From Octopus bimaculoides (taxonomy: Eukaryota): 38,665 nucleotides of DNA. A program made the translations under genes and the position numbers. This document shows positions 2,880-37,717 of the stretch, in pieces. The stretch is from the NCBI RefSeq assembly GCF_001194135.2, contig NC_068988.1, forward strand, positions 90,980,962 to 91,019,626, given 5' to 3'. The first letter of the stretch is position 1. Every line of letters begins with the position of its first letter. The notes under the pieces are model-generated. The model searched no databases and was not told the origin of the DNA. It was given only the letters and a program-made list of their open reading frames with translations.

Positions 2880-3035
2880 AATCCAGTTAGCCCAGACGAG
2901 TGGCGTGAGATCCGCAACTGCACCACCTATCCACCTGCCTGTGTACAACCCAAGTCATTTTATGTCCAGGATCATCGTCCGAATTTTAACGATTTTCACG
3001 AAGATTGTCTTTACCTGAACATTTACTTATCCCGG
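2880..3035 (+). CDS. Esterase exon a (NPVSPDEW...PPAC...[12 protein letters not shown])
   Basis: ttacag acceptor, gtaagt donor, 156 nt, phase 0/0; carboxylesterase type-B signature EDCLYLNIY. Missed by the ORF track. Confidence 0.95.

Positions 3036-37717: not shown

What the first reader, a model, noticed from the sequence alone, without database searches (positions are those of the whole stretch)
2880..37717. Neuroligin-like membrane protein that retains a complete Ser-Glu-His catalytic triad
Seen: the spliced protein carries neuroligin-type segments (YVQD...[22 protein letters not shown]...NYRL, EY..W, HGE, EFW..LIP). It lacks the AChE choline-site Trp and the third disulfide, and has a C-terminal TM helix, yet GHSAG, SNEGS and VPHGED are intact. 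Established: neuroligins are adhesion proteins that lost the catalytic Ser (GSGxG). From memory, vertebrate neuroligins have a 186-nt phase-1/1 exon running G|FLS...EG|LF, and exon c here has the same size, phases and ends. Inference: this may be an enzymatically active cell-surface relative or sister lineage of neuroligins. Molluscan esterases annotated as neuroligin-like are common, so novelty is unproven.
Basis: partly seen in the sequence, partly recalled or inferred. Interest (0 to 1): 0.72.

Follow-up and report, generated by a model that had tools for sequence, protein, structure and literature searches.

The report
Membrane-anchored octopus carboxylesterase, not a neuroligin
The window holds 10 of the 11 exons of an already annotated Octopus bimaculoides gene for a membrane-anchored carboxylesterase that belongs to a large mollusc-wide esterase clade; it is neither a neuroligin nor a true acetylcholinesterase, so it is an ordinary family member with a misleading database name.

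Summary
Ten + strand exons (2880-37717) splice into 524 aa, identical to residues 181-704 of a public 704-aa O. bimaculoides protein named "acetylcholinesterase". Exon 1 lies 35 kb upstream, outside the window. All N gaps fall in introns and hide no exon. The Ser-Glu-His triad, the two disulfides, the C-terminal TM helix and the 186-nt phase-1/1 exon are all real.

The neuroligin reading does not hold.
- In NJ and ML trees the protein sits in a mollusc-wide clade (HGGS / GHSAG / C-terminal TM, short tail) with 39/39 bootstraps.
- True neuroligins, including octopus's own 888-aa neuroligin, form a separate 39/39 clade.
- A sister grouping appeared in 0/39 bootstraps, but is not rejected outright (dlnL 14.7, P about 0.09).
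- The 186-nt exon is indeed shared with fish and limpet neuroligins. It is also shared with a generic limpet esterase outside both clades, so it is ancestral.

It is not an AChE either: the choline-site Trp, acyl pocket and peripheral site are missing, and the constraint costs dlnL 135.

Best reading: a probably active type-I membrane carboxylesterase of unknown substrate. Low novelty.

The parts
2880..3035 (+). Exon 2 of the gene (aa 181-232): Cys-loop region, YVQD...EDCLYLNIY. The loop is short and the choline-site Trp is deleted.
   Evidence: AG/GT borders, phases 0/0, 100% identical to P0001; W84 column is a gap.
5998..6145 (+). Exon 3 (aa 233-282): oxyanion-hole motif IHGGS and DGDVLA...NYRL.
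8840..9025 (+). Exon 4: 186 nt, phase 1/1 (G|FLS...KG|LF). It carries the nucleophile elbow GHSAG; the Ser327 codon is at 8974-8976.
   Evidence: The same exon is found in Haliotis P0008, Silurus NLGN4, Lottia NLGN and the generic Lottia esterase P0066.
14618..14811 (+). Exon 5 (aa 344-408): second disulfide loop (C382-C393).
17522..17660 (+). Exon 6 (aa 409-455): SNEGS, with the triad Glu450 codon at 17645-17647.
18424..18513 (+). Exon 7 (aa 455-485).
   Evidence: The flanking gaps 17876-18105 and 19070-19204 are intronic.
21341..21420 (+). Exon 8 (aa 485-511): the EY..W segment.
24265..24394 (+). Exon 9 (aa 512-555). There is no Cys at the position of the AChE third disulfide.
26219..26354 (+). 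Exon 10 (aa 555-600): VPHGED, with the triad His558 codon at 26227-26229. It ends at the family-wide 'KTG' phase-2 intron.
37402..37717 (+). Exon 11 (aa 600-704 plus stop): EFW..LIP, a short juxtamembrane helix, the TM helix (about 37625-37693) and an 11-residue basic tail ending ...[10 protein letters not shown].
   Evidence: Kyte-Doolittle 2.33 over aa 675-693; continuous helix 639-703.

Best explanation
The window carries exons 2-11 of an annotated Octopus bimaculoides gene. The gene has 11 exons over about 70 kb and encodes a 704-aa protein.

The protein is a type-I membrane protein made of:
- a signal peptide;
- a disordered Pro/Ser-rich stretch of about 115 aa;
- a type-B carboxylesterase (COesterase) domain;
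- a short helical stalk;
- one TM helix;
- an 11-residue basic cytosolic tail.

It belongs to a mollusc-wide, much duplicated clade of esterases defined by HGGS (oxyanion hole), GHSAG (nucleophile elbow), DEG/NEG (acid) and PHGxD (His), and usually by a C-terminal hydrophobic anchor with a short tail.

Inferred mechanism: an ordinary serine hydrolase. Ser327 is the nucleophile, activated by His558 and Glu450. The oxyanion hole is formed by the backbone NH groups of Gly248, Ser249 and Ala328. The active site faces the lumen or the outside of the cell, and the enzyme hydrolyses (or transfers) carboxyl esters other than acetylcholine.

Shown: gene structure, domain, motifs, clade membership, and exclusion from the neuroligin and cholinesterase clades. 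Inferred: catalytic activity, topology, substrate class and the compartment (cell surface or an internal organelle).
For: - Identity to P0001 and the gene model.
- Pfam COesterase 408 bits over aa 140-645.
- AlphaFold model with pLDDT above 90 over most of aa 138-650, residues 20-132 disordered, and a helix 639-703.
- Catalytic Ser, Glu, His, G118, A201, W233 and two disulfides conserved against Torpedo AChE numbering.
- GHSAG is the elbow of active insect esterases (Est6, JHEdup): PMC5626784.
- Most of the roughly 45 mollusc homologues share GHSAG and a C-terminal hydrophobic segment with a tail of 0-50 residues.
- Clade support is 99% in NJ and 39/39 in ML bootstraps, with the cephalopod subclade also 39/39.
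- The abalone member has the identical 11-exon, same-phase layout.
- C-terminally TM-anchored, triad-bearing carboxylesterases are a known kind (C. elegans CEST enzymes): PMC7641594.
Against: - No activity, expression or localisation data were available here.
- G119 is Ser and E199 is His. Both are unusual for cholinesterases, though backbone-mediated or seen in active esterases.
- Lys and Arg sit at the acyl-pocket positions (F288K, F290R). This could mean an unusual substrate or impaired catalysis.
- The ML code was written in-session (Gonnet-derived model, NNI only, 39 bootstraps), and the deep nodes are weak.
Confidence: 0.8

Rival explanations
1. One reading: the protein, with its mollusc clade, is the catalytically competent sister lineage of neuroligins, a surviving enzymatic form of the neuroligin ancestor.
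For: - Neuroligins are the top PDB hits by sequence and by fold, though only marginally.
- HGGS and His before the elbow residue are shared with neuroligins.
- The 186-nt phase-1/1 exon is shared with fish and limpet neuroligins and is absent from echidna CES1, an amphioxus ChE-like gene and a scallop AChE-like gene.
- The constrained tree is not rejected: dlnL 14.7, KH z 1.32, RELL P 0.09.
Against: - The grouping was recovered in 0/39 ML bootstraps, and the neuroligin stem is not among the 10 best placements.
- The shared exon, plus 7 more of the target's introns, is also present in the generic Lottia esterase P0066, which lies outside both clades. The exon is therefore ancestral.
- HGGS and GH-elbow motifs are scattered over other lineages: ticks, a tardigrade, P0390 and scallop P0081.
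- There is no stalk, no long tail and no PDZ-binding motif.
Confidence: 0.1
2. The database annotation is right: it is an acetylcholinesterase that terminates cholinergic transmission.
For: The NCBI name of P0001; an intact triad; membrane anchoring is known for AChE forms.
Against: - W84 is deleted. Other changes are Y70P, D72S, Y121V, W279Y, F288K, F290R, F330A, F331M, W432R and Y442E, and the third disulfide is absent.
- Forcing the clade next to Torpedo AChE and human BChE costs 135 lnL units (KH z 5.2, RELL P 0).
- A separate cholinesterase clade exists (vertebrate plus arthropod AChE, 35/39 bootstraps).
Confidence: 0.03
3. Despite the intact triad it acts mainly as a non-catalytic adhesion or binding protein (a pseudo-enzyme in the making), as cholinesterase-like adhesion molecules do.
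For: Charged residues at the acyl-pocket positions and G119S. One cephalopod paralogue (P0005) has lost the Ser (GHNAG) and has HGGR. Some arthropod neuroligins keep a Ser in the elbow (GHSTG).
Against: Ser, Glu and His are conserved together in nearly all of the roughly 45 clade members across gastropods, bivalves, chitons and cephalopods, which indicates purifying selection on catalysis. The tail is too short for adhesion signalling.
Confidence: 0.07

Closest known systems
Mollusc 'HGGS/GHSAG' membrane-anchored carboxylesterases (automated names: acetylcholinesterase-like, neuroligin-like, Ces2e-like); for example Argonauta hians P0002, Haliotis rubra P0008, Aplysia californica P0017
   Same: Same clade (39/39 bootstraps), same motifs, same C-terminal anchor. 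The same 11-exon, same-phase gene layout was confirmed in abalone only. Identity is 50% to Argonauta and 33-46% to other molluscs.
   Different: The cephalopod members add a disordered N-terminal stretch of about 80-130 residues. The octopus protein has SNEGS rather than the usual xDEGx. None of the members appears to have been characterised.
Neuroligins (vertebrate NLGN1-4; invertebrate Nlg; O. bimaculoides neuroligin P0433)
   Same: Same fold (TM-score about 0.85). Type-I topology with a C-terminal TM helix. HGGS motif. Shared ancestral introns, including the 186-nt phase-1/1 exon. Best PDB hits, by a small margin.
   Different: A separate clade. Neuroligins lack the nucleophile Ser (GSGAG or GHGxG in most). 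They have a longer Cys loop, an O-glycosylated stalk, and a 100-800-residue tail ending in a PDZ-binding motif. They also have only 4-5 coding introns.
C. elegans CEST carboxylesterases (cest-1.1, cest-2.2 and others; PMC7641594)
   Same: COesterase domain with a conserved Ser-His-Glu triad and a predicted C-terminal TM helix of about 20 residues, with the catalytic domain luminal. They are the precedent for active, membrane-anchored enzymes of this family.
   Different: A different lineage (nematode expansion). They are localised to lysosome-related organelles and act in ascaroside assembly. No orthology was shown here.
Acetylcholinesterase / butyrylcholinesterase
   Same: Fold, triad, first two disulfides, about 30% identity.
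   Different: No choline-binding Trp, no aromatic gorge, no acyl-pocket Phe residues, no third disulfide. Phylogenetically excluded.
Insect carboxylesterases with a GHSAG elbow (Drosophila Est6, JHEdup; PMC5626784)
   Same: The same nucleophile elbow in enzymes with demonstrated ester hydrolysis. In the ML tree the nearest named neighbours of the mollusc clade are insect and nematode CCEs, with weak support.
   Different: They are secreted and soluble, have no TM anchor and carry HGGG rather than HGGS.

Membership tests
Type-B carboxylesterase/cholinesterase superfamily (Pfam PF00135) | Full-length match to the COesterase profile | tested here: met
   408 bits, E 7.7e-122, profile positions 4-515 of 515.
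Type-B carboxylesterase/cholinesterase superfamily (Pfam PF00135) | Ser-Glu-His triad, oxyanion hole and two conserved disulfides at the canonical positions | tested here: met
   S200, E327, H440, G118, A201, C67-C94 and C254-C265 are conserved in the alignment with validated Torpedo AChE; G119 is Ser.
Type-B carboxylesterase/cholinesterase superfamily (Pfam PF00135) | Ester hydrolysis activity | not testable with these tools
   Needs recombinant protein. The predicted fold is confident, but the tool returns no coordinates, so triad geometry could not be measured.
Mollusc HGGS/GHSAG anchored esterase clade | Monophyly with the mollusc sequences | tested here: met
   NJ 99% of 200 bootstraps; ML 39/39.
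Mollusc HGGS/GHSAG anchored esterase clade | Shared gene structure and C-terminal hydrophobic anchor with a short tail | tested here: met
   Haliotis P0008 has the same 10 introns and phases. Most members have a TM segment.
Neuroligin | Placement inside the neuroligin clade | tested here: not met
   The neuroligin clade (21 taxa, including octopus P0433) has 39/39 support and excludes the target.
Neuroligin | Stalk, TM helix and long cytoplasmic tail with a C-terminal PDZ-binding motif | tested here: not met
   The tail is 11 residues ending RMTS. Neuroligins in the set have tails of about 100-800 residues ending TTRV, ITLV, EISV and similar.
Neuroligin | Loss of the nucleophile Ser (GxGxG elbow) | tested here: not met
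   GHSAG is present. This feature is not universal: some arthropod neuroligins have GHSTG.
Neuroligin | 186-nt phase-1/1 exon G|FLS...G|LF | tested here: met
   It lies at the identical aligned positions in Silurus NLGN4 and Lottia NLGN. It is not diagnostic, because the generic Lottia esterase P0066 has it too.
Neuroligin | Neurexin binding | not testable with these tools
   Needs a binding assay.
Acetylcholinesterase | Choline-binding Trp84, aromatic gorge, acyl-pocket Phe288/Phe290 and third disulfide | tested here: not met
   W84 is deleted; F288K, F290R, F330A, F331M, Y121V, W279Y; C402Y and C521M.
Acetylcholinesterase | Placement with bona fide cholinesterases | tested here: not met
   The constraint costs 135 lnL units, KH z 5.2.

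The most novel reading that the evidence does not exclude
The mollusc HGGS/GHSAG anchored esterases are the closest living catalytic relatives of neuroligins. On this reading they are a lophotrochozoan lineage that kept both the enzyme chemistry and the type-I membrane topology of the protein from which synaptic neuroligins evolved.
Probability: 0.1. Interest if true: 0.55.

Novelty: new member of a known kind. Interest (0 to 1): 0.2.

Why it matters
The practical value is for annotation. The public name "acetylcholinesterase", like the "neuroligin-like" names of its relatives, is wrong and could mislead work on cephalopod cholinergic or synaptic genes.

The analysis also shows that the 186-nt phase-1/1 neuroligin exon is an ancient intron pair of the family and not a neuroligin signature.

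The mollusc-wide, expanded clade of membrane-anchored and apparently active carboxylesterases is uncharacterised. It may be worth a biochemical look, for xenobiotic or lipid ester metabolism or for metabolite assembly as in the nematode CEST enzymes. Nothing here is surprising for the family.

Tried and rejected
- Genomic DNA for chicken NLGN4, octopus NLGN and oyster NLGN could not be fetched: only transcripts were held, or the genes were 625 kb and 105 kb. Silurus nlgn4xb and Lottia NLGN were used instead.
- A first ML bootstrap run timed out and was lost. The second gave 39 replicates.
- The representative search with chicken NLGN4 returned many fused multi-domain models. These were excluded by requiring a single full-length domain.
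- Intronic ORFs at 18732-18956, 22479-22905 and 3768-5078, suspected to be transposase or retroelement remnants, gave no Pfam hit.
- Literature searches for this mollusc clade, for octopus cholinesterase sequences and for the GHSAG motif in molluscs found nothing specific.
- The idea that the GH-elbow or HGGS motif is a synapomorphy with neuroligins was rejected, because both occur in several unrelated lineages.
- Triad geometry could not be measured, because structure prediction returns no coordinates.

Full report
**What is in the window**

The window is AT-rich eukaryotic DNA with nine N runs. A draft spliced product was searched against the protein collection. It matched a 704-aa protein, P0001, named "acetylcholinesterase [Octopus bimaculoides]"; the other hits were cephalopod paralogues at 40-50% identity and mollusc esterases at 33-46%.

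A tblastn search of P0001 against the window showed that the exons are 100% identical to residues 181-704. The encoding locus L001 (GCA_001194135.2, chromosome CM046608.1) contains the window at 42663-81327, with 100% identity and the same gaps. Exon 1 (aa 1-180) lies 35 kb upstream of the first window exon.

Exact GT-AG junctions give ten window exons:
- 2880-3035
- 5998-6145
- 8840-9025
- 14618-14811
- 17522-17660
- 18424-18513
- 21341-21420
- 24265-24394
- 26219-26354
- 37402-37717

Intron phases along the whole gene are 0, 0, 1, 1, 0, 1, 1, 0, 1, 2.

**Gap test**

None of the N runs touches an exon; the nearest is 165 nt from one. The chromosome-level assembly keeps the same gaps, so continuity could not be checked against independent sequence. 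Two other lines of evidence cover the question. The Haliotis rubra homologue P0008 has the same 11 exons with the same phases and nearly the same sizes. P0001 also aligns to Argonauta and other homologues with no missing block. No exon is hidden; only the intron lengths are uncertain.

**The protein**

Pfam gives a full-length COesterase match (408 bits). An AlphaFold model built on a 45-sequence alignment is confident over the esterase domain. Residues 20-132 are disordered (Pro/Ser-rich), and a long helix at 639-703 runs into the membrane segment. A Kyte-Doolittle scan places a TM helix at 675-693, followed by an 11-residue basic tail.

Aligned to it, the octopus protein keeps S200, E327, H440, G118, A201, W233 and the first two disulfides. 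It has G119S and E199H. It lacks W84 (deleted loop) and carries Y70P, D72S, Y121V, W279Y, F288K, F290R, F330A, F331M, W432R and Y442E. The third disulfide is absent. GHSAG is also the elbow of active insect esterases such as Est6 and JHEdup (PMC5626784).

**Is it neuroligin-like?**

Among solved structures, neuroligins are the best hits, but only by a small margin. By sequence the scores are NLGN2 268 bits, NLGN4 263, Anopheles AChE 253, Ces2e 242 and BChE 239. By Foldseek they are NLGN4 1e-50, Ces2e 1e-48 and AChE 1e-47, all with TM-scores of 0.85-0.87. No invertebrate esterase of this type has been solved, so this ranking cannot decide the question.

I sampled real neuroligins in three steps:
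- a search with human NLGN4X, using the aligned sequence;
- a search of 50%-identity representatives with chicken NLGN4;
- a search with an oyster neuroligin.

The last search returned named mollusc neuroligins, including "neuroligin-4, X-linked [Octopus bimaculoides]" (P0433, 888 aa, gene of 625 kb). The octopus therefore has a bona fide neuroligin elsewhere in its genome.

**NJ tree**

The tree used 129 domains, 510 columns and 200 bootstraps. The mollusc HGGS/GHSAG clade, which contains the target, has 99% support. The neuroligin clade has 96%. Deep nodes are unresolved.

**ML tree**

I wrote the ML code in-session. It uses a reversible model derived from the Gonnet matrix, four gamma categories, NNI search, 77 taxa and 510 columns, and includes the validated Torpedo AChE and human BChE. 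Bootstrap support:

| Clade | Support |
|---|---|
| Mollusc HGGS/GHSAG clade | 39/39 |
| Cephalopod subclade | 39/39 |
| Neuroligins | 39/39 |
| Cholinesterases (vertebrate plus arthropod) | 35/39 |

The nearest neighbours of the mollusc clade are an unnamed TM-anchored GHSCG protein (P0390, 14/39) and then insect and nematode carboxylesterases. All of these deep links are weak. A placement scan put 97% of the likelihood weight on those two branches, and the neuroligin stem was not among the ten best.

Constraint tests:

| Constraint | dlnL | KH z | RELL P | Outcome |
|---|---|---|---|---|
| Sister to neuroligins | 14.7 | 1.32 | 0.09 | not rejected |
| Sister to vertebrate CES | 38.5 | 2.2 | 0.014 | rejected (P 0.014) |
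| Sister to vertebrate cholinesterases | 135 | 5.2 | 0 | rejected |

The bipartition of mollusc clade plus neuroligins occurred in 0/39 bootstraps.

**The exon argument**

The Silurus nlgn4xb gene (L006) and a Lottia neuroligin gene (L007) both have a 186-nt phase-1/1 exon. Its borders fall at exactly the same aligned positions as the octopus and abalone exon. Three other genes lack these two introns: echidna CES1, an amphioxus ChE-like gene and a scallop AChE-like gene. At that stage the exon looked like a link to neuroligins.

The last available look-up settled it. Lottia P0066 is a generic secreted GQSSG esterase that falls outside both clades. It has both introns, and eight of the target's ten introns in all, at the same positions and phases; two of the eight align one residue off. 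The intron set is therefore ancestral for a broad part of the family. Neuroligins retained a few of these introns and some other lineages lost them. The 'KTG' phase-2 intron is shared by all genes examined.

**Other supposed neuroligin traits**

HGGS and a His before the elbow residue do occur in neuroligins. They also occur in tick AChE-like proteins, a tardigrade protein, P0390 and scallop P0081. The defining neuroligin architecture is absent: there is no long Cys loop, no stalk, no tail of 100 or more residues, and no PDZ-binding end.

**Verdict**

The best explanation is a type-I membrane-anchored, probably active carboxylesterase of a mollusc-wide clade.

The closest functional precedent is the C. 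elegans CEST family. These enzymes combine a conserved triad with a C-terminal TM helix and a luminal catalytic domain (PMC7641594). Substrate and compartment remain unknown. A deep sister relationship to neuroligins cannot be excluded statistically, but it has no positive support beyond weak similarity. I give it about 10%.

The NCBI name "acetylcholinesterase" is not supported. Novelty is low: the sequence is already public and the kind is known.

Noticed in passing
window 9639-11282, minus strand (intron between exons 8840-9025 and 14618-14811): A LINE-type retroelement fragment. One ORF matches reverse transcriptase RVT_1 (E 1.5e-15). A second ORF matches the endonuclease-reverse transcriptase family, but below the curated cut-off (E 4e-4). 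It coincides with the GC-rich stretch at 10-12 kb (GC 0.515 against about 0.36 elsewhere).
   Followed up: partly
window 15688-16279 and 33824-34378: Two copies of an interspersed repeat, 97% identical and about 0.6 kb, in two different introns 18.1 kb apart. It is probably a young SINE- or MITE-like element and was not classified.
   Followed up: partly
L001 10001-10540 (outside the window, 35 kb upstream): Exon 1 encodes the signal peptide and a Pro/Ser/Gln-rich segment of about 115 residues with pLDDT below 50, ahead of the esterase domain. Similar N-terminal extensions occur in the Argonauta paralogues but not in other molluscs.
   Followed up: partly
P0005 (Argonauta hians paralogue): One cephalopod paralogue has lost the nucleophile (GHNAG) and has HGGR in the oxyanion motif. 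This is a possible non-catalytic derivative within the clade.
   Followed up: no
window 20135-20990, 21423-21590, 7186-7371, 12461-13276 and elsewhere: Very abundant microsatellite arrays (period 8-12, TG/CA-rich) in the introns. They give long spurious ORFs on both strands and often abut the assembly gaps.
   Followed up: no
window 18732-18956 and 22479-22905, + strand: Short intronic ORFs whose translations look like mariner/Tc1-type transposase remnants (for example ...[13 protein letters not shown]...). Pfam gave no hit, so this is unverified.
   Followed up: partly
P0318, P0331, P0341, P0342, P0353 (arthropod neuroligin-clade representatives): Some proteins in the neuroligin clade, or resembling it, have long tails and keep a Ser in the elbow (GHSTG). 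P0318 and P0341 fall inside the clade in the trees; P0331, P0342 and P0353 were dropped from the tree set and are only presumed members. Loss of the Ser is therefore not universal in neuroligins.
   Followed up: no
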